From Euprymna scolopes (Eukaryota), in the NCBI GenBank assembly GCA_053919585.1, contig CM132783.1: a stretch of DNA of 64,000 nucleotides; one strand, given 5' to 3'. Below are positions 3,992 through 56,943 of this stretch, in pieces. Each line of letters starts with the position of its first letter. Positions within the stretch are counted from its first letter, which is position 1. The notes under the pieces are model-generated. The model saw nothing but the letters and a program-made list of their open reading frames with translations, was not told the DNA's origin and did not search any database. A program made the position numbers and the translations under genes.

Positions 3992-4201
3992 CCTAATTAC
4001 TTGCTTCCCCACGAGGGCCGAGTTAGATACAAGGTCGGTTGTTAATGCGGGGAAAATCCAGCTCCCCAAAAAGGGGCACTCTGAATAGAAACAAAAAGTT
4101 CTAAAATGTCTCAGTCATGAGGATTTCTCCTCCACCAATCAAGGACAGGAAAGGTGAAGTGTAGAATCAGAACAGATACTACACTGCGATCTTGGCCCGA
4201 A
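3992..4201 (-). mobile_element. U2 snRNA-headed SINE-like element, copy 1, with 14-bp TSD
   Basis: Minus head gccttcgggccaagatcgcagtgtagtatctgttct aligns to U2 nt ~12-46. Flanked by ggcttcagtttgtt at 3978-3991 and 4202-4215. Homologous copies at 27300 and 56524. Confidence 0.8.
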
Positions 4202-9157: not shown

Positions 9158-9344
9158 TTATCTTACTTACTAGTAAAAGTATATTATAGAAATACACGTT
9201 ATGATTCTCCCAGCCATAACTGCCATGAATAGCTACATCGATATTCATCATCACCTCTGAAATGGGTAGATTATAAGCAAAACTCGAAACATTATTATGA
9301 AAGTAAACAGTGAACCTTGGGTTAAATTTTCGCAACTTTGTGAC

Positions 9345-9535
9345 TCGCGCTTCTCTTATTTCATCCTTTAATCATCGCATTCCAGGAACGATGTTTCGGA
9401 CAAAGAGATGAAAATTGCTGTGAAACTATCCATCTAGCATTTATTGTTGGCTAGTTTCTGACCTTGAAGTATTTTTCCTTAAACTACTTACATCAAGTAG
9501 CTTCATGCCTTGTCTAGGGCGATTTCCATAAAAAT
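9345..9535 (+). mobile_element. CR1-group family C 3' UTR fragment
   Basis: cctttaatc..cattcca..cgatgtttc.gacaaa...catcaagtagcttcatgccttgtctagggcgatttccataaaa. The tail recurs at ~26150, 42100, 42430, 52600 and 56900. Confidence 0.7.
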
Positions 9536-14698: not shown

Positions 14699-15554
14699 TA
14701 TATATATATATATATAACATATGCCTCCAAAATTAATGTTTCAAAACGGGTAGCAGTGTTTGTTAGCAATGTTTACTCCTTTATATCGGTTGTGTGAACA
14801 TATATACAACTTGACAGAGTCATGGAACCAAAGATTAATAATACAGCATCCAATTCTTACGTGACTCAGCAAAGAATGGTAGTATTCCACCAGAATCCAA
14901 AACTTCTATAGAAATTAATGCCTAAAAATAAGTTGAAATGTCATTCATTCAAATTAAAAAAAAAAAATCTTCATAAATTAATATTACGAGAAAAAATAGT
15001 AAACGTTGAGTTTATTAATTTTTATGGGGGAAGCAGGAACTACTGGATTGACCCAGGCAATAAATACAGTTACATCTAAAATATTTTGGCAGTTATGGCT
15101 ACAGAAATACGACGTGTACTTCTGTAACATAGTTTTGCTTATACGTTTTTGTTAATTATACCACTGTGTCTTTATTACCGCCTGCAAGGTCACAACGCTA
15201 ATGAACAGATGACTATGAAAATTTCTTATTGACATATGCTACCATAAGAAGAAGGTAATGCTAAGGAGAATGATTTGTGTTATCAAATCCAGCTGTTTGA
15301 TTATACCCACTTCCTAACATAAAATACAGCAAACATTAATGTTATTTTTTCCTTTCGTTTCGAAAAACTCAACCATGTTCTGCAAAGTCAGAAACAAAAA
15401 TAAAATTTCCTCTACAAACTAAGCACTATAAATAAATATTTGAAGAAAAAAAGAACTTGAAGCATAAAAACATTTACTAAAATTACTGGATTTAGCATTA
15501 AATAACCTGAAAAGGGTTGGTATGCCGTTAAACAAAACAACGAAACAACTAAAC

Positions 15555-15770
15555 CGGGAGAAAGGTATGACAAGAGAAGAGATTTCACCCCCCCCCTAAA
15601 AAACAAGGAGATAGTAATCCCTGGAAAGAATGTATCATGATCACAGAAGAGATATTGCACCACACCCAATCAAAACGTTGGAGTAATGTCTAGGAGGATG
15701 GTATTATGATAACAGAAAAAAATATTACAATATTAATACTCCTTCTCTGAATTGAGTCTTAAAAGATATG
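15555..15770 (-). repeat. Degenerate ~65-bp U2-motif array, about 3 units
   Basis: Reverse complement of the unit seen at 53858-54951, with the same ctcaattc leader. Confidence 0.55.
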
Positions 15771-16434
15771 TTAGGATTTTCCCAACTACAGACGGTAACA
15801 AAATAATGTGATGATGACAAGAAGAAAGGAACACAACAGAAATTAAGTTGTTGTAAGAAAACTTGTATTGACAGGAAAGAGGGGGAAGAAAGAATGTTTC
15901 TTTGCAAAAAACGTCGCTTTTGCGGAACTTATCTATGATTCGTCCTTTTAACGTTGTTTGTTTCCTGTGGAGTTTGGCCGGGTTAGGGTAAAAAATAAGG
16001 AAGTCTTGAATTTTTTGGTGCTGCAATTGCTGTCGGAACTTTGCCCACGTGTCTGGTATGAATGACGGAGAAGACTGAATAACACGTGTTGTCTTCGAGG
16101 CCTTAATAGGCAAAAGAGAAAGAGAAGTCAAATAATCACTCTCGGGGGTAAGAAGGAATCTAAAAAGGGAGGTCTGTGATTGGTTGTTTTTCATCCAATC
16201 ACAAGGCACCCGGTTAGTGACTCCTTAATAATTCCAATAGATAGTCTAAAATATAACAGTAAACTGAATAGGAATAAAAGATAATAGAATAGGATAGTTT
16301 CTGCTTTGAGCAGACAGATATCGAATCTCCATTAAAAATAGCTTAGTTACAACTCTTGACAAAAAACAAAAGGCATAAAAAAAACTTTTAAGCTTACTAT
16401 TTCCCATCCAATCACGCACGCATACACACGTTAG

Positions 16435-16700: not shown

Positions 16701-18206
16701 GAAAAAGAAATAAGAGAAATAAAACATGTACTCAAACAAGATACATTTCCTGCTTCTCTCTTTCCCTCACATATGCAAACGTATAAGTGCAGAGAAAACG
16801 TTTTCTCCTCATGTTAAAATTCTAAGAAAAAATTATTTAGACTGAAAGCAAGTAATACAGTAAAACTAGCTACTAAATAAAAAAAAAAATACATATTTCA
16901 GAATAATGGTTCTAAGATCGCCAACAGAAAAAAAAAATGTAACACCTTGTCCATGTAAAGACAGAACGAAATCGAATAGAAAAAAATGCAATAAATTGTC
17001 TATTATAAATACAAGCATTGTAATTGTTCAGCTCTACGAGGATTCAAAATAATGGATAGGAAATGTCCAAAATGTTTTGAAAAGATTTGGATAGTATGAG
17101 AATGGAATATAGTTCTGTGGTAGTTACCACCTCTAAATAAACGGACAATATGGATTTGTCTGGCTTATACATTTTAGTAGATAGGTTGTGAATTTGCCAT
17201 ATTTATTTTATTAGCTACAAATATTAATATTAATTATATTTATTTCAGTTTTTAATTTATATTTTTTTTTATTTGATTGTATTATTAAATTTATAATAGT
17301 TTTTTTTTCTAGTCCACGAATGTACTTATTTTATCTGGCAAGCTGATTTTAAATATAGCATAAATAGATCCGACAATTTTATTCTCTGCTCGCCCGCTGC
17401 ATGTTGTATCCTTTAAAATGACACTAGTCCAACAGCCAAATTATGGCGTGTTACGATGTTTTTTTTTTAAAAATCTTGTTGAATGCAGAGCTGTATTCAA
17501 GCTAAGACGATCCTTAATAGTTATGCATTGAAGACGGGCGCTTTTAGCAAATAAGTTATGAATTTGCGATATTTATTTATTTTTTATTAGATGTAAATGT
17601 TAATATTATATTTATTTCCGTTTTTAATTGATATATTTTTTTTATTGCGTTTTCTTACATGTGTTAAAATTTATTATTGGAATTTGTCAATTCGCAGTTT
17701 GTGATTCACTTGCTATTGCCTCAAAATAAATGCATTCTCTAATTTTGTTTGTCCACGCGTTCTTTTGCAAAATAATTATTCATTCTTTACAAGACACTAT
17801 AAATAGTCATACTATTAAAGCGCCGCCTAGCGTCGAATATGTGTGCAAAAGGGAAAGATAAATTCCATAAAAATAAAGTCGGAAATGACTTGAGGAAAAT
17901 AGCAGAATTGCCGTACGTAAACTTTGCTAACTGAGTTCTTTCTTTATTTCAGTTATTGAGAGAGGAACCTATTGCCATACTTCCCCTAAACATGTCGATT
18001 GAACTTAAATAAATAGAATACTTATTATTACTATTATTAATGGAGAGTAGACAATGCATTGTGGATACATTATCGGCAGCTCTCATAACTCTTGCTTATC
18101 CTCATTTAGAATGAGTAATATTTCTAACAAAAGAAAGAAGAAAAAGCTGTCTATGTATTTATCATAAATTGAACTCATTAATAATGGAACATTAAAATAA
18201 AATGGT

Positions 18207-19664: not shown

Positions 19665-20814
19665 TTATAATTTGAAGAGATTGAAATGTAAGAAAATTCA
19701 AGAAATTAGTGTCTCAAACATATGATCTAAATTTCATTTTAACTGGATATAATATATTATATTTTTAAATCGCTTCAAACAAGGCATAAAGCCATTTGAT
19801 GTAAGAAGTTAAAAAATACTACTTCAAGGTCAAAAACTAACCAGATAAGTGTGAGATGGACAGATTCCGACTCCATAAACAGCAACTTCCTTCTTTGTCA
19901 AAACATATGGAACATATTACAACAGGACTGCTTCATTGCAGACTACAGCATGGTCGTCTTCAAGTCCATTATGAAGAAATAGTTGCTGCATTGTCCTCTT
20001 AAGCAATCAAATTTCGTCCATTCCTTCCATCGTTTTCAATACTCTCATCATACAACTCATTAACCCTTACACTCAAATGACTTTTGGCTTTTTAAAGTCG
20101 TGGTACATTCATCAGATTTGATTTAATGTCTTTTTTACATGCTGACATGTGTTGGCTTTAAGAAAGTGTCATTCAAACTAATCTATCTCTGCCCAGGTTT
20201 TTATTTATCCCTCTTTCTCTCAAATCCAGCCTTATTAGTCCATCCCATGTTTTCCTTGGCCTTTCTTGGTGGGATGACTTTAATTATTTTACATTTAATA
20301 ACCAATAACATATTGATATAAGTAATAAAAAAGGCAATAATTTATCATCTTAGCAATATTACCCAAAACAAAAAATGGTTATGACATTATTGATGGATAG
20401 AATTTTTCTTTCTAAATGGGTTGAAAATATTATACAATTTCTTTGTAATTGCCAAAATTCTGAATATATACTATTATGGAATAAGATGATTTACCTATTT
20501 ATGGAATAATGGGCTTGCTCAAAGTCTATAAATATAGTAACATCAAACACATTATTGGGTAGCGATTCATAGCAGTTATGGCCCCAGAGTTTTGACGGAT
20601 ACATCTGTAATGTACTTTCGTTTTTTGTTCGTCTTTATTGGCCTGCAAGGCTCCAACATATCTATCTGGTCGGGCTCCTTGCCCAAACCAATATGACTCT
20701 CTCTCTCCAAATTTACCTGTTTTCCATTAGCTGCCTCAGATCTTCGTCACAGTTGACATCATGTGCAATTTGCTAGATTTACGTGGATCTAGGTCGTCCT
20801 ATGTTCATAGCTGA

Positions 20815-22629: not shown

Positions 22630-22950
22630 TATATTACTCATGGAAATTTAGGTATCTGTCTGTCTGAAGCTAAGACTATACTATTACTGTAATTAATGGA
22701 CTATTGTAACTAATTTTAATGCTAAATATAACATATGATGATTATAAAATTATTCTCATTTTTGGATCAGTTAATACTAAAAAAAGTTAGATTAGTTTTG
22801 TAAATAGCCTTTCTTCAATTAATAGCCTGGATATTGAAGGTCAGGCTATGGAGTTAAAGGTGACTTTACAATGCTTTTATTACACTGGAGGTTATCTGTA
22901 AGTAGAAAAAAAAAACAAATAAATATTTAAAATAAAAATATGTTTATCGG

Positions 22951-23087
22951 AATTTAAAAGTTAAAAACCGCAAGAACTTTCTTGTTAACCTGATATATTA
23001 CTCATGGAGATTTTGGTATCTGTCTGTCTGAAGACAAAACTACACTATTACTGCAATTAATGGACTATTGTAACTAATTTTAATGCT
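22951..23087 (+). repeat. Diverged duplicate of 22587-22723 (mariner right TIR plus flank)
   Basis: Direct alignment at an offset of 364 bp. Confidence 0.9.
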
Positions 23088-23330
23088 CAATTCGAGATGG
23101 GGGCAGGACAGTATAGTACCTGTTCTGTTGTCATGAACCAACGTCCGAAGCATTATTTAAAGGAGTAATGTTTGTTAGTCATGTTATTAACCTCACAGGC
23201 ATTATTTTATAATTTTCTCGAGGGAGGGATAGTATAATATCTATGCTGTGATCTTGATACTATCCTCTCATAATTGCTATCACTCTTTTTGGGAGGAGGA
23301 ATGTAGTATCTGTTCATGTTTCATGAGACG
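23075..23330 (+). repeat. Degenerate ~65-bp U2-motif array, about 4 units
   Basis: aatgctcaattc leader and units containing (g)tagtatctgttc. Interrupted by a CR1 tail, resuming at ~23575 (attacctcctccttgggag). Confidence 0.7.
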
Positions 23331-23570
23331 ATAGAACTGTACGCCTGTGGAACTCTGTTCCGTCTGCCTGCTTCCCACCTGACTACAACCTGTATGTCTT
23401 CAAGTCCAACGTAAACAAATTCCTAATGAACTGCCACCTCAAGTAAACACTTCAATAAATCTCCACACTAACGTACTGTACTTGCAATAACCCTTATCCC
23501 TGAGTAGCTTCCGGGCCTTGATAAGTGGTGACCACCGTGTAAAAAAAAACAAAAAAACAAAAAAAAAAAC
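23331..23570 (+). mobile_element. CR1-group family B 3' fragment
   Basis: RTVRLWNSVPSACFPPDYNLYVFKSNVNKFLMN, then 3' UTR and an A-rich tail. Confidence 0.9.
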
Positions 23571-23698
23571 TCTTAGCCATTACCTCCTCCTTGGGAGTAG
23601 AGTGGCATAGATGAATAAGAAAGTGTCACAATTAGCTGTTCATTACAAAAATCAACACTTACTTATAAATATGTGACCAGAGAAGAATAGCTTTGCTA

Positions 23699-23741
<43 letters not shown>

Positions 23742-23745
<4 letters not shown>

Positions 23746-25379: not shown

Positions 25380-26320
25380 CTGCTTCCAAGCTGACTACAA
25401 GTTGAATGTTTACAAATTCATCTTCAGCCACCCCCTTAAATAATCAAATTCTGCCCAGATCCAACCATGGTTTGCAATCCTCAAGATGTTTGTCTCACTA
25501 TTCACCTGATACAAACCCATTAACCATTGTCCTCGAGTGGCCTTATACCCTTGATGAGCACTGGCTTATTAGTGAAAAAGAAAATTTTGTAGCCTATACG
25601 TGTTGTTATCATATTTGGGCTGGTGAATCTCTATACTATTAGAGGGTTCTTGTTAAGGTGCAGTAACGTATCTGTGATTTGATAAGCGTTTCTTCTTTGC
25701 AACCCGTTTCTCACAGACGTGATGTTGCTAGTCTCAGTCTTTTCCATAAATACTATTATGGTATATGTTCTTCAGAATGGTCTGATCTTATAACCTGCTT
25801 GATTCGTTGGTCTAGTGATCTTCATCAGATCACTATTTAGATACCTCATTGTAATACCATTTCTTATTCCAGTAGCTTCTTTCCAAGAACCGCAAGCTTG
25901 TGGAACTCATAGGCGATTACATAATTAGTAGCCTGAATTCATTTGAGGTTTTTGTTTTGGTGAGCAAAAGTTGAAAGTCAGTCACCAAATTCCTGTGTGC
26001 GCACAAGAAAGCTGTCATTAAATTTTTATAAATTAAGGTGGTGTCATTCTTCTGAGCAACTTATAACCTTGGTCTTTTCAAGACTTAGGTCAATAGGCAT
26101 CTTTTGTCTTTGTAATAATCATCTTTTGATCTTGTTAGCTCCTCACATAAAGTCGGAAGCGATTTGCATAAAAAAAACAGCAATTATTATCATTATTATA
26201 AGTAGTAGTAGAATATTTTAATTTTCTACTCAACTATCTCCATCATCCATCGAATAATCATTTACCTTTATACTCGAGTAACTTTTGGCCTTGGTTAGCA
26301 GTGTCTCATTAGTATAAAAA
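25380..26320 (+). mobile_element. Cluster of CR1-group 3' fragments (families B and C)
   Basis: YCCHIWAG-like, HRRDVASLSLF and FFPRTASLWNS remnants, plus both family tails. Confidence 0.75.
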
Positions 26321-41794: not shown

Positions 41795-42475
41795 TTTCCG
41801 AGAACTGCCCATGCATGGAACGCAATACCAATGACTACAGCATGGTCGATTTCAAGTCCAATGTTAACAAATTCTTACCGAGCCGTCCCCTTAAATAATC
41901 AAATTCTGTCCAGATGGAAATATTGTTAACAATCCTTTGTTTTGTTTTATCCTTTAGTTCTCACATTCCACGAGCTATGTGTCTGACAAAAAGGGAAGAA
42001 TTGCTGCTTTGTGGGTTGTAATCCATCCATATTGCATATATCATTCATTATTTTAGTTTTTCACTCTGCAGTATTATTTTTTTAGCTCCTTGTATAAGGT
42101 AGCTTCATGCCTTGTCTAAAGCGATTTGTACACAAAAAAAAAACAAATAAAAAAACACACACACACACACAAAATTGCCTTATATATTTCCAGTTTCATT
42201 TCTTTCAGCTCACTGGGCTCGTTGGCCTAGTGGTCTTCATCAATTTACTATTTTGATACTTCATTGAAATACAGTTTTCTATTCCAGTAGCTTCTTTCCA
42301 AGAACTGCAAGCTTATGGAACTCTCTTCCTGCTCACTGTTTTCTTCCTACTTATAGCATTAAGCTTTTAAAAACTAAGGCCAATAGGTATCTTTGTGATA
42401 ATCATCTTTTGTTCCTGTTAGCTCCTTACATTAAGTGGCTTCATGCCTTGTCTTTAAATATTTTCATCAAAAGAC
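41795..42475 (+). mobile_element. Cluster of CR1-group 3' fragments (B and two C tails)
   Basis: FFPRTASLWNSLPAHCF remnant and the tail gtggcttcatgccttgtct present twice. Confidence 0.75.
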
Positions 42476-43914
42476 AATTATTTCAGTATGGTAATGGGAC
42501 TGTGTAGGTCACTAAACACATACTCATCAACTTAACTGCTATTTCAAATATGCTTTTCTTATCTAATGTTGTATTTCTTGCTGTGATTAAAAGAATGACG
42601 ACAAACACTGATGCATAAAAATATAATATTTTTATTATTGTTGGTGGCAGTGAATGAGTGTGGGTGAATCAGAGGAGTGTAAGGAGCATGAAAATTGATG
42701 GAAGTTGAACTCTTAATTGGGCTAGTTTATATAACGTTTTTTGATGCCCACGCATTCATCTATAAATATCCATAGTTGCATTAAAAAATGATGGTTGTTT
42801 GGTTTTACGGCATATGACCTCTTTTTAGATTATTTAATGCTGAGCTCAGTCATTTTAGTAAAAAGTTTTAGAATAGAAGATCTTGACTAAAATCAGTGAT
42901 GATGTTCATAAAGGAGTTTGAAAAAAAGAAGAAAATAGCAACGAGTGACAACAAGACGGTATAGAAAATTTGCTTATATTCTTTTTTATTAAAAGGTAAA
43001 TAGGTGAAGTTTATAACTCTAGACCCCCTCAACTAGGCAAATTTAGCTTCTTCTCAAAACTTTTTTCTTTCTGGAGAGGGAGACCTATCTCCAAGCTTAT
43101 CTTTAAAATAAATGTGAATCATACGAAGTGCAATACCTAGTTGTCCTTTTTTTTGTTTAAAATAAAAAAAAAAAAAAAAAAAAATAGGAAAGTAGAAAAG
43201 GTATTGTAGATGATTTTCGGCAGTCCAGAAACTCTCACTTGCCCTATTTTGTTCTTCAATCCTCATCTTCAACAAATGAGCGATGTTTCTGACAAAGGGG
43301 GAAGAAAAACGCTGTATACTCGGTCGACTGTTTTGTGTTAGCAGTCGCTAGAGATGACTAAATTCTTTTTTCATTCTATTCTTGTCGCCATGTCACTAAT
43401 AAGGTTGCTGAAGGTAACCGTTTTCCTGTGTTAACGTTATCCACCTGGTAGTCAGGGACCCCAACCTTAAAGTAATTCCCAAGAAGACCGTCCTATCAGA
43501 AGGTGCAAAATACCAGAACTGCTGCATTCAATGGAATCTGGAACATGCAGAAGCTTTTGGTAGAGTCTTTCAATGCCATATATTAGTGGAACTGCTACAG
43601 CTTTTCCTTTTCAATAATCAACAAAAATCTTTCTTCACTTATTCTTTCATCCCTATATTTTCTCTTGCTTATCTTCTGTTCTGCGTTAAACAACTCTGCT
43701 AACTTCTTCCACAAACTCCCCAATCTAATAATGGAAAATTCCAAAAACCAAAGCAAGATAAAACCCAGAATCAAAACTTCCAACAAGACTCCCACAATAA
43801 GGTCTCCTTCTCTAACATCAACTCTGACTTTGAACTTCCAGAGATCGAAATACAAGGTGAAACGATAAATTCGTTGCTCTAAAGAAAACAACACTACACC
43901 CCTATTTTAAAATT

Positions 43915-51560: not shown

Positions 51561-52574
51561 AAACTTATATATAAAAAAGAAATAAAAAGGAAACAATTCT
51601 TTTTTTATATATTTTTAAAATTTAAAATAAGAAATGATTTTGATTTTTTGGTCATAATTGAAAAGTATTTCCATATTACCAGTTATCCGTGTGGGGATTG
51701 TATGCATTTATAAATAAACTGTAGCAAGGGACTTTATTATAGTTCTAATAAAAGTGTACAAAAAAATACCGAACGACAATAGTCAGGAACAAAGTTTGAT
51801 ATGCCAGTTTAAATGCGATTCATATCTAACTTTTAATACACAAACAGACAACAGTTTCTGCTGATTAAAATATTAGTAATCACTTATTTTACCTTGTCTT
51901 AACTATTACAGTTAACTATTAGAAGTTGGTTGTGTGTTGAATGTAAGTTACTATGCAAAGCATTGATAACAATAAGTATCAAATAATGTGTTAGATGCGT
52001 CTAAATGGATTTGGTTAAAATGATCAGAATCCTAGAAAAGAATTTAGTAGAAAATGTGATGAAAGACCAACTTAAAAGTAACTTTGAACGTTTTCATTAC
52101 CTTCATGACTACACATTTACTTCAACACATTAGCTGATACCTGTCGACGTGTCGTTAAAATGAACAGATTGTCAGAACATTTTGTTTTTGCCATGTCAAC
52201 ATACGTTGCTGACAGCTTACGAGGAGACGATCTGACATGTACTGAGTTAGGTGAGGGTTGCTGAGTTAATATAATGCAAAACCCAAATTCGCTAATGAGG
52301 ACAGTGCACCATTGAATATCTTCCTGATGGCATCCGAGGAATATATTTCATGATATTGAATCAAATTGAAGAGTACCGTATTGACTGAAACCATGCCAAC
52401 TTCCTAAATCTTAATAATGTCTACATTTTGTAAAGAGTCTCCAGAAAGTACAAGGTGTAAATTCAGATATTTTTTTTTTAGCTTGTTTTAAGGTTTGCTC
52501 ACTTAGATTTTCTAAAATAGATAGTGTTTATTGGTAGATGGACTTTATTCTACACAGTTTTATTAATTTATTTA

Positions 52575-53270
52575 TTATGGAAATCACTCCAGAAAAAGCG
52601 TGAAGCCACTTGATGTAAGGAGCTAACAAGAATAAAAGATGATTACCACAAAAGCAGGAGATGCTTATTGTCGTTTGTCTTGAAACGACCTAAATTATAG
52701 ATAGGTGGAAACAGTCAGCAGGAAGAGAGTTCCACAATCTTACAGTTACTGGAAAGAACCGACTGAAATAGGAAGCACGAGGTATCAAAATAGCAAATTG
52801 ATAGAAACCACTAGACTGGCGAGTCAAACGAGATGGAACAAAGAAAGGAATAGATCAGACAATTCTGAAAAACGCATGCCGTAATAGTATTTATAAAATA
52901 AAAAGACTAATGACATCATGTCTGCGAGAGAAAGGTAGCAGATAAAAAAAAAAGGTGTAATCAAATTACTAATACGTTTTTGCACGTTATCAAAAATGGA
53001 ACAGAGATTCGCCAGCTCAAATATGAAAACTACTTGATGCATGATCTGATAATAGATTTGTAGGAATAAATAGCCTCAGGTGTGAGAAAGTGTTTGGAGC
53101 GAAAGAAGAAAAAAGAACAATGGATCAAATATACGAACTGTAAGAAAAATTTGATAAGAAAAAAAGATCAAGCAAATTTAGAGTCAATTTGAAATCATCC
53201 ATGAGAATCTCAGAAACAAAGGGTCACACTTACGATTGAAAGACACAAACTGAGTCTTAAAAGAATTAAA
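52575..53270 (-). mobile_element. CR1-group family C 3' portion, decayed
   Basis: FVSFNR, HFLTPEAIY, DNVQKRISNLI and FYKYYYG remnants plus the family C tail. Confidence 0.8.
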
Positions 53271-53630: not shown

Positions 53631-53673
53631 ATCTACAATCGAACCGAAGTCATCTTAATCAGCTGCATATTTC

Positions 53674-53806
53674 AACTGATCTGAGGAAGATGGGCGAGAA
53701 GAAACACTCCCAGAGAACATTTTTAATAAAATTAATATTTAAACTGATCTGAGGAAGATGGGCGAGAAGAAACACTCCCAGAGAACATTTTTAATAAAAT
53801 TAATAT
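53674..53806. repeat. Perfect tandem duplication with 68-bp period
   Basis: 53674-53738 is identical to 53742-53806. Confidence 0.95.
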
Positions 53807-54264
53807 CTCGACTGATGAACTATTACTTCTATTAATGTATTATTGCACTATTTTTCAATGCTCGATTCAGGGGTATAATGCAACATCTCATCTGTTATGA
53901 AACCATCCTCCAGGCACTACCTCCTCCTTTATGGAGAAGTGTATCATATGTTCATTCATCATGAGACCATTCTCCCAACAATTACTTCCTTTTTGGGGGG
54001 AGAATGATATCTATCTTGTGGTCATGATACTATTCTCCTGTGTATTACCTCTTTCTTTTAGGTAGGGGTGGAGGTAGTGTAATATATTTTGTCATATCAT
54101 TTGCACAGGCATTACCTCCTCCTATTTGTAATATTGTACTATCTTTTAATACTCAATTCTGGGGGAGTTGGGTAATGTAGTATCTGTTCTGTTGTCAGAA
54201 GATCATCCACCCGGGCATTACTTCCACCTATGAAAGGTAGTGCACTATCGGTTTTGAGTCATTG

Positions 54265-54666
54265 TAGACTAGAGGATCAAATAAATACTTTTAAAAAGGT
54301 GATTTTTAGGGCTATTTGGGTACGGTATGAACGAACATCAAGGTTAAATTTGTTGCCCACAAGCAATTTTTATGATGTTAAGTCCTCCACATTTCCATGT
54401 TTTATCTAATATTTTAAAGTGGCCGCCATTTTATTTTATTGTTACATAAGACACTTGAGGCATACGCCCAGCAATACAAAACCCTCCTCTTTCCAAGTGA
54501 AAAATGGCGAGCAGTGAAAACAAAGAATATATTTCATAATGAAGGTGTTAATATCAAAATAATTTCTTGCTGGTGAAAAATGTAACTGTGATTCGCTCAT
54601 ACCAGATCCAAATACCCCTAGAAATCAACTTTTTCATAATGAATCTTCATTTGGTCCTCTAGGTCA
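54265..54666. mobile_element. ~400-bp MITE with ~55-bp diverged TIRs
   Basis: ctagaggatcaaat..aaaaggtgatttttagggctatttgg versus ccaaatacccctagaaatcaacttttt..atttggtcctctag. cattg on both flanks is a candidate TSD. Confidence 0.7.
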
Positions 54667-54951
54667 CATTGACCCTGTACTGTTGTGATGATACCATTTT
54701 GCCATGCATTACCTCCTCGTTTATTGGAAGAAGGATAAATGTAGTATATGCTTGTTCATCCTGATGCCATCCTCACATCTTCCTCATTTTGAGAGGGCAG
54801 GCTTGTAGTATATGTTCATTCATCATGATATCATCCTTCCAGGGATTAGCTCCACCTTTTAGGAGAATATAGTGTAGTATCTGTTTTGTAGTCATCATAG
54901 TATCCTCCCAGTCATTACTTTCACCTTTGGGAAGGAATAGTGTACCATTTG

Positions 54952-56006
54952 CACAATCACGTTGACACACCGGTTCTCATCAGATCACTGAAGTAATGTT
55001 GAGCTTAGCCAGTATCAGATGGGTGACAATTTGGGGAGGCGAGGCCCTGTGTGTGTAATGTGGGCTGTCATCATAGCATAGTATCTGTGTTAGCTGTGGC
55101 AAGCAGGGCCAAAACATTATTACTACTATTATTATTAATTGATTCGAGCGACGGCATGTCGCTGCATCAATTATTATTAGAAAAATAAACAATTAGATTG
55201 GGGAAAGTGATTGACAGCTGAAATAATAATATTGCTAAAAGGAATGTGAAAACAGAAAATAGATGTAAACATGATATTGATTTGCATAAACAAATAACTA
55301 GATTGAGGTTACATCAGCTGTTGGTTTGAGACACGTAATGAGATGTAGATTTGGAGAGATTCTAGTCAGTCATTAGCTGGACATCAGAGAGAACGGACAA
55401 CTCAAAGGGGGGGGTCTCTCTATGACGCGGGGAGCGGCGTTATCTCAGGCAGCCAAGATGTAAAAACGTTGTAATCTTTGAAGATGTCAGATGAAATCAT
55501 GAAAATAAATGTTCTTAAATAATTCAGGTATGTGTTGTGTTATTAACATCTGTTAAAAAGAACTGTTTGTCTATAACTGTTTCGATACGTAAATTGTTTC
55601 CCGTTAGATCTGTTGCATAAATGTTAAACTATACACACTACGCATTTACACGTACATGAATACACAGAAAACGATAAACACCACTATTCAACATGTACGT
55701 TGTTATAGAACATATTCATATACACATCACATAACAGACCCCTTTTTGGTGCCATAATATAACATATGTACCATGAGGTAAAATACCAGGTTGAGAAACT
55801 GGCGTGGTCTATCCTTCTCTCGAAGGTAGATTGGACTCTCCTAAGCTGTGGTAGGCATCCAGTCTAGTGAGGGCGTCAGGATAAAAAATACCCTTGTTAT
55901 ACCCCGGTGAAGCATCAAGTATTCAGCTACCAACAAGATTTGAATTAAACTACAAAACTCGGATAGTGAGTTCAATCTCGGCTATGGGCGCACTGGATGG
56001 TCGATG
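54952..56006 (+). mobile_element. 5S rRNA-derived SINE3 family C, split by a solo LTR
   Basis: 5S head at 54952-55053; body resumes at 55765 (tatgtacc); gatgg tail. TSD gtaccatttg (54942-54951) / gtactatttg (56007-56016). Confidence 0.75.
55054..55764. mobile_element. Solo LTR with 4-bp TSD
   Basis: TGTAAT...ATAACA termini with flanks tgtg/tatg. Removing it restores the SINE junction tgtatgtacc seen at ~40187. Confidence 0.7.
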
Positions 56007-56523
56007 GTACTATTTGTTCTGTTATCATGAGGCTATCTTCTCCAGCCTAATCTCTTCCTTGGGGCAGTCAAGAAAAAAAATCATAATGCCTAACACAACA
56101 CTTGCATTATATATACACTAGTAAAAAAGATAAATATTCTGCTGCAAAAAAAAATTAAAAAACTATAGAGGAGGAGAAAGAGATGTTTACGATAATCTCA
56201 TACAAATAACTCATTCTCAGGAAGTCAAGGTTTGTGAGCTAAATTGATGCATTAATAATTCAAAATTGCTTTTATTACATTATCCATGTTCGGCTTTATG
56301 AAAGAAAGTTCAGCTCTTTTTCCCCTTTTCACTCACACACACAATTTGTGTTGTTGCAAAGTGAGGCCTGATTTATGCAGCCGTGAATAACACAAACGGA
56401 AACGAGGTTCAAGAATAGTTATTCTAACTGGTAAAAACATACACATGTATCTAATATCTTATATATGAAATACGATTTTCTTCTGTTGTTTTACGGCATA
56501 TCAATCCTATTTTGAATCCATGG

Positions 56524-56708: not shown

Positions 56709-56759
56709 ATTTTTTGAGTGATATAATGCCGATACATGACATCTATTGCAAACTCTCAC

Positions 56760-56943
56760 TTCCCTTATTTTGTCCTTTAATCCTCACATTCCATGAGCGA
56801 TATTTCTGACAAAGAGGAAATAATTGCTGTTTTCTGTGCCTGCCTATCTAACACTTGTTGGCTGATTTTTAACGTTCATGTGTTTTTTACCACTTTACAT
56901 CAAGTGGCTTCATACCTAGTCTGGAGCAATTTTCATAAAAAAT
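56760..56943 (+). mobile_element. CR1-group family C 3' UTR fragment
   Basis: Collinear with 9345-9535. Confidence 0.75.

What the first reader, a model, noticed from the sequence alone, without database searches (positions are those of the whole stretch)
53820..56066. Dispersed tandem arrays of a ~65-bp unit built around the U2 5' domain
Seen: arrays at 15555-15770 (-), 23075-23600 (+) and 53820-56066 (+) share a leader (ctattac..attaatg..tattg..cta.ttt.aat(g/a)ctc(a/g)attc) followed by diverged units. The better-preserved units have a CC-TTTT-GG hairpin, ~8 nt, then (A)GTGTAGTATCTGTT. This is the same order and nearly the same spacing as U2 stem I and the branch-recognition region. The best units match U2 over 14-15 nt (~54173, ~54870, ~23302). 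Inference: a mobile leader-plus-array element whose monomer is U2-derived, possibly related to the U2-SINE or made of multiplied target sites for U2-specific retrotransposons.
Basis: partly seen in the sequence, partly recalled or inferred. Interest (0 to 1): 0.8.

Follow-up and report, generated by a model that had tools for sequence, protein, structure and literature searches.

The report
Old mobile element with U2-like repeats
The three arrays are decayed copies of one old, abundant jumping-DNA family in a mollusc genome, whose middle is a variable run of ~67-bp repeats that each carry a short piece resembling U2 spliceosomal RNA; it looks like dead repeat DNA with an unusual origin, not a working RNA gene.

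Summary
All three places carry the same leader followed by diverged ~67-bp units.

- **U2 likeness.** A unit profile built from 110 to 465 units keeps 16-17 of 17 bases of U2's AGTGTAGTATCTGTTCT. It aligns in order with native U2 nt 13-48, and 0 of 5000 shuffles score as well. The rest of the unit, the head and the tail are not U2-like.
- **Anatomy.** The arrays are the middle of a dispersed non-coding element. It has a ~100-nt head, 1 to 30 or more units, an optional ~70-nt tail, a 15-bp-stem terminal hairpin, and an A/T-rich or microsatellite end.
- **Abundance and age.** I estimate roughly 34,000 units genome-wide. Units are about 77% identical to their consensus, so the family is old.
- **How arrays form.** The first unit is of a consistent type across loci, indels sit in the T/G runs, and one locus has expanded locally. 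This points to arrays copied whole and resized by tandem duplication, not built by insertions at the U2 38/39 site.
- **How it moves.** Flanking direct repeats (p≈0.01) and microsatellites on the 3' side only favour a LINE-dependent retroposon. The architecture also fits mollusc Helentron-type (HINE) elements. This is unresolved.
- **Expression.** No polyA-RNA signal lies over the array.

Earlier scan notes describe other U2-derived arrays in this genome; this family is distinct and older.

The parts
53818..53870 (+). Element A: 3' part of the family head (profile positions 43-88). It is 5'-truncated and abuts a 68-bp x2.2 repeat at 53667-53816.
   Evidence: Head profile hit, E 4.7e-06; head consensus from 88 copies; TRF row.
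53863..54144 (+). Element A: five ~67-bp units. The last breaks off at unit column ~41.
   Evidence: Unit profile hits, E 2e-13 to 0.0085.
54127..54159 (+). Second partial head (profile 59-86). A second element B starts here, in tandem.
   Evidence: Head profile hit, E 0.0057; read.
54158..54261 (+). Element B: two units. The first has 16/17 of the U2 core at 54174-54190.
54262..54653 (.). Foreign MITE-like insertion inside the array. It has inverted ends GAGGATCAAAT/GAGGACCAAAT and a TA on each side.
   Evidence: Read directly. Contigs of related organisms span both junctions (records 9, 10, 3).
54654..54952 (+). Element B: about 4.6 more units. The one at 54841-54908 has 16/17 of the U2 core. 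The last is cut at column 43.
   Evidence: Unit profile hits, E 2e-12 to 1e-4.
54953..56006 (.). Foreign 1054-bp insertion in the U2-like core of a unit, flanked by GTACCATTTG/GTACTATTTG. It is a 5S-headed SINE (head 54949-55055, body about 55765-56006) with nested material.
   Evidence: Split-unit scan; Rfam 5S 28.7 bits; loose ends joining the 5S head to 55765 in other copies.
56007..56067 (+). Rest of the interrupted unit (columns 33-66) and the last partial unit.
   Evidence: Unit hit, E 0.0015; read.
56068..56163 (+). Probable tail and decayed left arm of the terminal hairpin (ACTAGTAAAAAAGATAAATATTC), then an A-rich end.
   Evidence: Alignment to the tail+hairpin consensus scores 41. 20 of 2000 shuffles and 8 of 2000 random window segments reach it. 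No stable fold remains.
22994..23699 (+). Copy 2. Head 23000-23093; units 23099-23332; polyA SINE insertion about 23333-23570; last unit 23576-23605; tail 23602-23667; decayed hairpin ending in GCTAG; then (TA)21 at 23700-23742. A duplicate of the head with its 5' flank lies at 22636-22727.
   Evidence: TRF.
15197..16337 (-). Copy 3. Head 16337-16273; about 500 bp foreign; head end 15769-15749; units 15745-15557; foreign stretch; last unit plus tail 15275-15197, truncated.

Best explanation
These are dead copies of an old, abundant, non-coding mobile element family of this mollusc genome.

**Anatomy (shown).**
- A ~100-nt head starting TCTATTACTAATGGAGATTTGG, with a short (GTCT)n run.
- A variable array of ~67-bp units.
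- An optional ~70-nt tail that begins like a unit.
- A terminal palindrome, ACTAGCAAAAATATGC-loop-GCATATTTTTGCTAGT.
- An A/T-rich or microsatellite end.

**Origin of the unit (inferred).** One unit-sized segment of the ancestral element contained about 35 nt copied from the 5' domain of U2 snRNA: the stem-loop I loop, the branch-site recognition sequence and the start of stem IIa, nt 13-48. It came either from U2 itself or from a U2-headed SINE, for example by template switching.

**Growth of the arrays (shown in part).** That segment was multiplied by tandem duplication in master copies. Whole arrays were then copied to new sites, and they kept expanding or shrinking locally afterwards.

**Way of moving (inferred, about 55-60%).** Retroposition by a LINE that recognises the 3' hairpin and tail, as for stringent-type SINEs. 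The internal repeat region then compares with the VNTR of SVA.

The window's copies show no sign of expression or function.
For: **Family and anatomy.**
- Head, units, tail and hairpin recur in order at unrelated loci.
- The hairpin folds with z -4.6 to -7.1.

**Abundance and age.**
- A 22-mer of the unit with up to 3 mismatches occurs 9050 times against 6 for the control.
- In my sample, profile-detected units outnumber such 22-mer matches 3.76 to 1, which gives about 34,000 units.
- Mean identity to the consensus is 0.77.
- The locus is present at about 92% identity in a related organism.

**U2 origin.**
- The native U2 was read from the genome's own 764-bp tandem gene array.
- The unit profile scores 11.5-12.6 bits against U2 nt 13-48, and 0 of 5000 dinucleotide shuffles reach that.
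- The head, tail and hairpin profiles serve as negative controls.
- U2 is the only Rfam family that recurs on the arrays. It is on the array strand and below threshold.

**Whole-array copying and tandem duplication.**
- The unit next to the head is the C/TG type (GTAGTATCTGTTCTG) in 22 of 35 loci, while inner units are a mix.
- Within-array identity mostly equals between-locus identity (0.65-0.70 against 0.68).
- Some arrays carry private variants, and two loci 4.6 kb apart on one contig (L033, L044) each hold at least 30 units at 96% identity.
- Indels sit in the T/G runs.
- The tail starts as a diverged unit.

**Retroposition.**
- Direct repeats flank 13 complete copies more often than permuted pairs (3 score 9 or more, P=0.0008; mean, P=0.002).
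- The same holds against same-locus shifted controls (Fisher 0.013, Mann-Whitney 0.011). The best case is L045, 13/14.
- (TA)n, (ATA)n and (TTTA)n lie only on the 3' side, where the first 20 nt are 81.5% A+T against 65% background.
- There are 5'-truncated heads, and 5' extensions from a neighbouring repeat.
Against: - **Weak TSD signal.** It rests on three good pairs out of 13 old copies. Two of those lie 13-15 nt upstream of the presumed 5' end.
- **Ends poorly fixed.** The 3' boundary is not sharp, and some copies share sequence beyond the hairpin.
- **No partner LINE found.** The exact hairpin pattern occurs only 8 times genome-wide.
- **No known head type.** The head matches no small-RNA family, and the units contain T runs that would hinder pol III.
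- **The architecture fits HINEs.** Left flank with a (GTCT)n run, central repeats, and a right flank with a palindrome is what is described for mollusc Helentron-type non-autonomous elements (PMC7492417, PMC4067079). The ends read TC...CTAG, as in Helitrons.
- **The U2 match is short.** It was picked after the fact. At column 40 the majority base in the wider sample is A, not the C of U2.
Confidence: 0.5

Rival explanations
1. The family is a rolling-circle element: a non-autonomous Helentron (HINE, DINE-1-like) or Helitron relative that carries satellite-like central repeats, as is common in molluscs. The U2-like segment would then be a captured host or SINE fragment that was multiplied inside the element.
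For: - The order of parts matches the published HINE plan (PMC7492417 read; PMC4067079 read): left flank with a short (GTCT)2-3 microsatellite, central tandem repeats always in one orientation, and a right flank ending in a palindrome.
- A candidate subterminal inverted repeat exists. TTACTAATGGA lies 3-4 nt from the 5' end and TTCATTAGCAA lies before the palindrome, matching 9/11 (10/14 when extended) when I compared the head and tail consensuses by eye.
- The 5' end is TC and about half of the 3' ends read CTAG followed by T.
- By my own count from the flank listings, the base before TCTATT is A in 9 of 12 clear cases.
- Both flanks are AT-rich.
- Tandem or stacked heads are frequent.
Against: - Flanking direct repeats of 9-14 bp exceed both kinds of control.
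- Microsatellites occur only after the 3' end.
- The subTIR candidate is not significant on its own. I estimate about 0.15 by chance, and it is missing in copies where the hairpin follows the array directly.
- CTAG lies inside the stem, not about 11 bp after it.
- The 5' neighbouring base is A, not the T expected for Helentrons.
- No autonomous partner was looked for successfully.
Confidence: 0.3
2. Each unit is a separate unit-length retroposon inserted at the U2 nt 38/39 site used by Keno and Utopia LINEs, so arrays grow by self-stacking, as earlier scan notes propose for a younger U2-derived family in this genome.
For: - The unit core contains the Keno/Utopia target, and U2 downstream of such insertions starts at nt 39 (PMC4640811).
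- Any phase of a tandem array is formally compatible with this.
- One SINE insertion in the window sits exactly in the core, with a 10-bp duplication.
- Earlier notes s1-295489 and s1-247296 are leads only.
Against: - There are no indel or junction scars at columns 38/39 (1.3%), while the T/G runs carry 17-43%.
- The first unit has a consistent subtype across 35 loci.
- Several arrays carry array-private variants, and one locus is a 96%-identical local expansion.
- Only 1 of about 465 units has a foreign insertion in the core. Other copies of that 5S-SINE family sit in unrelated A-rich targets.
- The head and tail grade into unit-like sequence.
Confidence: 0.07
3. The resemblance to U2 is a coincidence. 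The unit is an ordinary internal repeat with a chance 16-17-mer match. This rival is about the unit's origin only and is independent of how the element moves.
For: - The match is short, and U2 was chosen after seeing U2-SINEs in the same window.
- The best shuffles come close (11.0 against 11.5 bits).
- Column 40 is A in 60% of all 396 units and 51% once the L033/L044 expansion is excluded.
- The rest of the unit is not U2-like.
- Rfam scores stay far below the gathering threshold.
Against: - 0 of 5000 shuffles reach the real score with three profile versions.
- The whole-unit alignment is reached by 4 of 3000 shuffles.
- The match is collinear with the stem I loop at the right spacing.
- The head-adjacent unit, probably the oldest, is the most U2-like.
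- Among 4227 Rfam families only U2 recurs on arrays, on the correct strand.
- U2-derived mobile sequence is abundant in this genome.
Confidence: 0.18

Closest known systems
Cg_HINE, pearl and DINE-1: non-autonomous Helentrons with central satellite-like repeats (PMC7492417, PMC4067079)
   Same: Left flank with a short GTCY-type microsatellite, a central tandem array of variable copy number in fixed orientation, a right flank with a terminal palindrome, thousands of dispersed short arrays in a mollusc genome, and occasional local growth into satellite-like arrays.
   Different: Flanks show direct repeats above chance. Microsatellites follow the 3' end. The subTIRs are only 9/11. The 5' neighbour is A rather than T. 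The monomers are ~67 bp and contain a U2-like segment. No Helentron partner was identified.
SINEU: SINEs with U1/U2-derived heads in crocodilians (PMC4494074)
   Same: A short non-coding dispersed element that carries part of the U2 5' region. It has no recognisable pol III promoter and contains T runs. Some copies have 5' extensions from a neighbouring repeat. The partner LINE is hard to find.
   Different: In SINEU the snRNA piece is the 5' head. Here it is internal and tandemly multiplied, and the head is unrelated to any Rfam family.
SVA and other VNTR-bearing composite retroposons (as summarised in PMC4494074)
   Same: A non-autonomous element whose middle is a variable-number tandem repeat that is copied as a whole and changes length after insertion.
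   Different: There is no sequence relation. This element is much shorter, ends in a hairpin plus an A/T-rich tail instead of a plain polyA, and has an unknown partner.
U2_sat, a U2 gene-derived satellite of Ciona, and the Keno/Utopia U2-targeting LINEs (PMC4640811)
   Same: Tandem repeats that derive from U2 and include the nt 38/39 target sequence.
   Different: Here the repeats sit inside a mobile element, only about half of each unit is U2-like, and I found no enrichment of insertions at the target position.

Membership tests
LINE-dependent SINE-like retroposon | Short, non-coding, dispersed in many copies with a conserved 5' start and 3' end | tested here: met
LINE-dependent SINE-like retroposon | Target-site duplications of variable length flanking each copy | tested here: inconclusive
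   3 of 13 copies score 9 or more. Permutation P=0.0008. Shifted same-locus controls give Fisher 0.013. The copies are old and their ends uncertain.
LINE-dependent SINE-like retroposon | Head derived from tRNA, 5S, 7SL or another small RNA with an internal promoter | tested here: not met
   No Rfam family matches the head in 12 loci. The head profile against U2 is not significant: 110 of 5000 shuffles reach it.
LINE-dependent SINE-like retroposon | 3' tail shared with a partner LINE | not tested
   The exact hairpin pattern occurs only 8 times.
SINEU (snRNA-headed SINE) | U1- or U2-derived sequence forms the 5' head | tested here: not met
   The U2-like segment lies in the internal units. The head is unrelated.
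HINE / non-autonomous Helentron | Left flank, central tandem repeats and right flank with a 3' palindrome; microsatellite in the left flank | tested here: met
   criteria.
HINE / non-autonomous Helentron | 12-15-bp subterminal inverted repeats, at least 11 bp identical, 2-4 nt from the 5' end and before the palindrome | tested here: inconclusive
   Best candidate is 9/11 (10/14) between the consensus head and tail, compared by eye. It is absent in tail-less copies.
HINE / non-autonomous Helentron | Insertion in TT or T-rich DNA without target duplication | tested here: inconclusive
   The 5' neighbour is A in 9 of 12 cases by my own count. Flank repeats exceed chance. One empty-site attempt failed.
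Canonical Helitron | 5' TC, 3' CTRR, a palindrome about 11 bp before the end, insertion between A and T, no TSD | tested here: inconclusive
   TC and CTAG are present, but CTAG lies inside the stem and T follows as part of the palindrome. For TSD see above.
U2 snRNA gene or pseudogene (RF00004) | Reaches the Rfam gathering score over the U2 model | tested here: not met
   14.9, 20.3 and 23.5 bits against 46. None at the gathering threshold in the window.
Arrays built at the Keno/Utopia U2 target site | Unit junctions or foreign insertions concentrated at U2 nt 38/39 | tested here: not met
   One insertion in about 465 units. Indels at columns 38/39 are 1.3%.

The most novel reading that the evidence does not exclude
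The ~67-nt unit began as, or still behaved as, a unit-length retroposon that carries the Keno/Utopia U2 target. The head-tail element would then be an ancient landing pad. This old family would be the ancestor of the young self-stacking U2-derived arrays noted elsewhere in this genome, recording long-term activity of a U2-site-specific LINE in cephalopods outside real U2 genes.
Probability: 0.07. Interest if true: 0.65.

Novelty: new variant of a known kind. Interest (0 to 1): 0.33.

Why it matters
I found no description of a transposable element whose internal tandem repeat is built around a U2 snRNA fragment. That rests on five full-text searches; no repeat database such as Repbase or Dfam could be queried. 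Known snRNA-derived SINE parts are 5' heads, and the one U2-derived satellite I found mentioned (Ciona U2_sat) is free-standing.

If the U2 origin and the way of moving are confirmed, the family adds a case of small-RNA sequence being captured, multiplied and spread to tens of thousands of sites. It also gives an older layer to the U2-derived repeats that are unusually abundant in this genome.

Practically, it warns annotators that these arrays are neither U2 pseudogenes nor satellites. For the biology of the host it is most likely neutral, decayed DNA.

Tried and rejected
- **Rfam family search of the whole genome.** It failed three times. I obtained native U2 by a pattern search instead.
- **TRF.** It does not see the arrays.
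- **More 3' ends.** A search with one tail found only 4 places.
- **Partner LINE.** The exact hairpin pattern occurs only 8 times, and no loci could be cut after that. No partner element was found.
- **More U2 homology.** The rest of the unit against U2 nt 49-185 gave nothing. The head, tail and hairpin against U2 gave nothing.
- **Small-RNA origin of the head.** No Rfam match.
- **Empty site.** The one attempt (L085 against L073) failed, because the shared flank is another repeat family that merely ends there.
- **A supposed 'head + short body + polyA' variant.** It turned out to be that other repeat with an expanded A run.
- **Two apparent TSDs.** Those of L070 and L027 proved to be element-like sequence, and I gave them no weight.
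- **A structured RNA unit.** The window's units do not fold better than shuffles.
- **Expression.** PolyA RNA-seq of two studies gives depth 0-5 over the array, while the inserted SINEs collect reads from their paralogues. No small-RNA data were examined.
Full report
**Observation.**
The three stretches were read directly.

TRF reports none of them. An iterated nhmmer profile seeded with one unit (54840-54909) recovers 6+6 units in the main locus, 4 in copy 2 and 3-4 in copy 3.

AGTGTAGTATCTGTTCT with up to three mismatches occurs five times in the window against 0.18 expected. Four are in the arrays and one is in a U2-headed SINE at 4169-4185.

**Is the unit U2-like beyond chance?**
The genome's real U2 was read from a 764-bp tandem gene array holding 1172 pattern matches.

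A unit profile from 110 units has the consensus AGGCATTACCTCCTCCTTTGGGGAGGGGGTAGTGTAGTATCTGTTCTGTTGTCATGATACCATCCTCC. With 396-465 units from 77 loci, one core position becomes polymorphic. At column 40 A is 60% and C 29%. Excluding one locally expanded locus gives A 168 and C 113.

The profiles align unit columns 15-48 to U2 nt 13-48. This covers the stem-loop I loop, the branch-site recognition sequence and the start of stem IIa, with a single 2-nt gap. They score 11.5-12.6 bits, and none of 5000 dinucleotide shuffles of U2 reaches that.

- The head, tail and hairpin profiles of the same element score nothing. They serve as internal controls.
- The remainder of the unit has no similarity to the rest of U2.
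- In permissive Rfam scans, U2 is the only family that recurs on arrays. It is on the array strand, at 14.9, 20.3 and 23.5 bits, far below the gathering score of 46.

I take the U2 origin of this ~35-nt segment as likely, about 80%. It could have come directly from U2 or through the genome's U2-headed SINEs, which share the GTTCTG variant.

**What the arrays belong to.**
Genome searches with the array returned hundreds to thousands of first-look candidates at 68-83% identity.

It reads TCTATTACTAATGGAGATTTGGTATCTGTCTGTCTGAAGCCGAAACTATACTATTACTTCTATTAATGTACTATTGTACTATCTTTCAATGCTCAATTC. Similarity stops upstream of it.
- *Units and tail.* Downstream of 1-13 units (at least 30 per locus at two neighbouring places) many copies have a ~70-nt tail, GTAGCATACATCAACAAGAAATTGTCACAATCAGCTGTTCATTAGCAAACTCAACACTTATATATA. 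Its start is a diverged unit.
- *Hairpin.* The element ends in a palindrome, ACTAGCAAAAATATGC, a loop of about 10 nt, GCATATTTTTGCTAGT. It folds with z -4.6 to -7.1 in preserved copies.
- *3' end.* After it comes A/T-rich sequence or (TA)n, (ATA)n or (TTTA)n.
- *Numbers.* A unit 22-mer with up to 3 mismatches occurs 9050 times against 6 for the reversed control. In my loci, profile-detected units outnumber such matches 3.76-fold, which gives roughly 34,000 units. Mean identity to the consensus is 0.77.
- *Age.* Contigs of a related organism cover the array junctions of this very locus at about 92% identity, so the insertion predates that split.

**Anatomy of the window's copies.**
The main stretch is two elements in tandem.
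- Element A: a 5'-truncated head (53818-53870) with five units.
- Element B: a second partial head (54127-54159) with units up to 54952.
- Element B is interrupted by a MITE-like insertion (54262-54653).
- It is also interrupted by a 1054-bp insertion (54953-56006) that starts with a 5S-derived SINE head and is flanked by GTACCATTTG/GTACTATTTG.
- The interrupted unit resumes at 56007.
- A probable tail and a decayed hairpin arm follow to about 56163.

Copy 2 is 22994-23699, with a polyA SINE inside and (TA)21 behind it. Copy 3 is 16337-15197 on the minus strand, with two foreign stretches.

**How the arrays arise.**
Across 35 arrays anchored at a head, the first unit is the C/TG type (GTAGTATCTGTTCTG, the most U2-like) in 22. 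Inner units are a mix of A and C types. Unit order is therefore inherited from master copies.

Within-array identity is mostly 0.65-0.70, the same as between loci (0.68). Some arrays have private variants. Two loci 4.6 kb apart on one contig (L033, L044) each hold at least 30 units at 96% identity, a local satellite-like expansion.

Indels concentrate in the T and G runs (17-43%) and are 1.3% at the position that corresponds to U2 nt 38/39. That position is where Keno and Utopia LINEs insert (PMC4640811). Only one of about 465 units carries a foreign insertion in the core. Other copies of that 5S-SINE family sit in unrelated A-rich targets.

Arrays are thus best explained by tandem duplication plus copying of whole arrays. 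Stacking of unit-length insertions or a target-site trap explains them less well.

**How the element moves.**
Two readings remain.

*For a LINE-dependent retroposon:*
- Flanking direct repeats in 13 complete copies exceed permuted pairs. Three score 9 or more (P=0.0008) and the mean has P=0.002.
- They also exceed same-locus shifted controls (Fisher 0.013, Mann-Whitney 0.011). The best is 13/14 in L045.
- Microsatellites and A-richness lie only on the 3' side.
- There are 5'-truncated heads.
- A subset has a 5' extension from an adjacent abundant repeat. This recalls the 5' extensions of SINEU-2 (PMC4494074).

*For a rolling-circle element:*
- The plan is exactly that of mollusc HINEs (PMC7492417; PMC4067079): left flank with a (GTCT)n run, central repeats, and a right flank with a palindrome.
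- The ends read TC...CTAG.
- By my count from the flank listings, the base before the 5' end is A in 9 of 12 clear cases.
- There is a 9/11 candidate subterminal inverted repeat.

No partner of either kind was found. The one empty-site attempt failed. I put retroposition at about 55-60% and a Helentron or Helitron relative at about 30%.

**Function.**
PolyA RNA-seq from two studies gives depth 0-5 over the array, while the inserted SINEs collect many imperfect reads from paralogues. The window's units do not fold better than shuffles. Nothing suggests a working RNA. These are decayed relics.

**Comparison and novelty.**
Three things are each known: TE-borne tandem arrays (HINE, SVA), snRNA-derived SINE parts (SINEU), and a U2-derived satellite (Ciona U2_sat, mentioned in PMC4640811).

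I found no description of a dispersed element whose internal repeat monomer contains a U2 fragment. That rests on five full-text searches; no repeat database could be queried. I rate it a new variant of a known kind, of moderate interest to specialists.

Earlier notes of this scan describe younger U2-headed, self-stacking arrays elsewhere in this genome. The present family shares only the U2 core with the U2-headed SINE in this window, and it does not show the stacking signature.

Noticed in passing
window 54953-56006: A 5S-headed SINE (head 54949-55055, body about 55765-56006, about 700 bp of nested material between) sits exactly in the U2-like core of a unit. It is flanked by a 10-bp duplication, GTAC(C/T)ATTTG. 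Its paralogues are abundant in polyA RNA-seq.
   Followed up: partly
window 9299-9534, 18043-18154, 19764-19914, 26094-26174, 41925-42136, 42410-42472, 43188-43370, 52572-52634, 56749-56941; L085, L004, L073: An unrelated ~250-bp repeat family (TTTTTATGAAAATCGCTCCAG...ACTTTCTACTTTC) has ten profile hits in this window. In L085 and L004, and by my own reading at a second place in L085 and twice in this window at about 22600 and 22960, its end lies 0-7 nt before the head of the family studied here, as if a subfamily carried it as a 5' extension.
   Followed up: partly
L012, L016, L056: The 3' end of the young U2-headed SINE abuts the 5' end of the head (L012) and the 3' hairpin (L016) of the old element, and it interrupts a head at position ~60 (L056). 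This could be chance given that SINE's abundance.
   Followed up: no
window 23333-23570; L008 about 1764; L070 about 1940: A polyA-tailed SINE family (starting GATAGAACTG...CTGTTCC) is inserted at nearly the same unit position (after CATGA.AC) in two independent arrays.
   Followed up: no
L033 and L044 (G000:C23:45.83 Mb): Two loci 4.6 kb apart each hold at least 30 units at 96% identity. This is a recent local satellite-like expansion of the old unit.
   Followed up: partly
window 53667-53816: A 68-bp x2.2 tandem repeat (95% matches) directly abuts the truncated head. Its first 20 nt loosely resemble the head's GGTATCTGTCTGTCTGAAG part.
   Followed up: no
window 54262-54653: A MITE-like insertion with 11-12-bp inverted ends (GAGGATCAAAT / GAGGACCAAAT) and TA on both sides. 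Contigs of related organisms span both of its junctions.
   Followed up: partly
head consensus, positions ~34-88: The head contains G-poor motifs (AAACTATACTATTACTTCTATT, TTGTACTATCTTTCAAT) that loosely parallel the U2 core AAAGTGTAGTATCTGTTCTTAT. The resemblance is not significant: 110 of 5000 shuffles reach it.
   Followed up: partly
G000:C9:168.87-168.97 Mb (L023-L025): The native U2 genes form a regular 764-bp tandem array. A 36-nt U2 pattern with up to 1 mismatch has 1172 matches genome-wide. This U2 has GATCAAAGTG, one more A than the Rfam consensus.
   Followed up: partly
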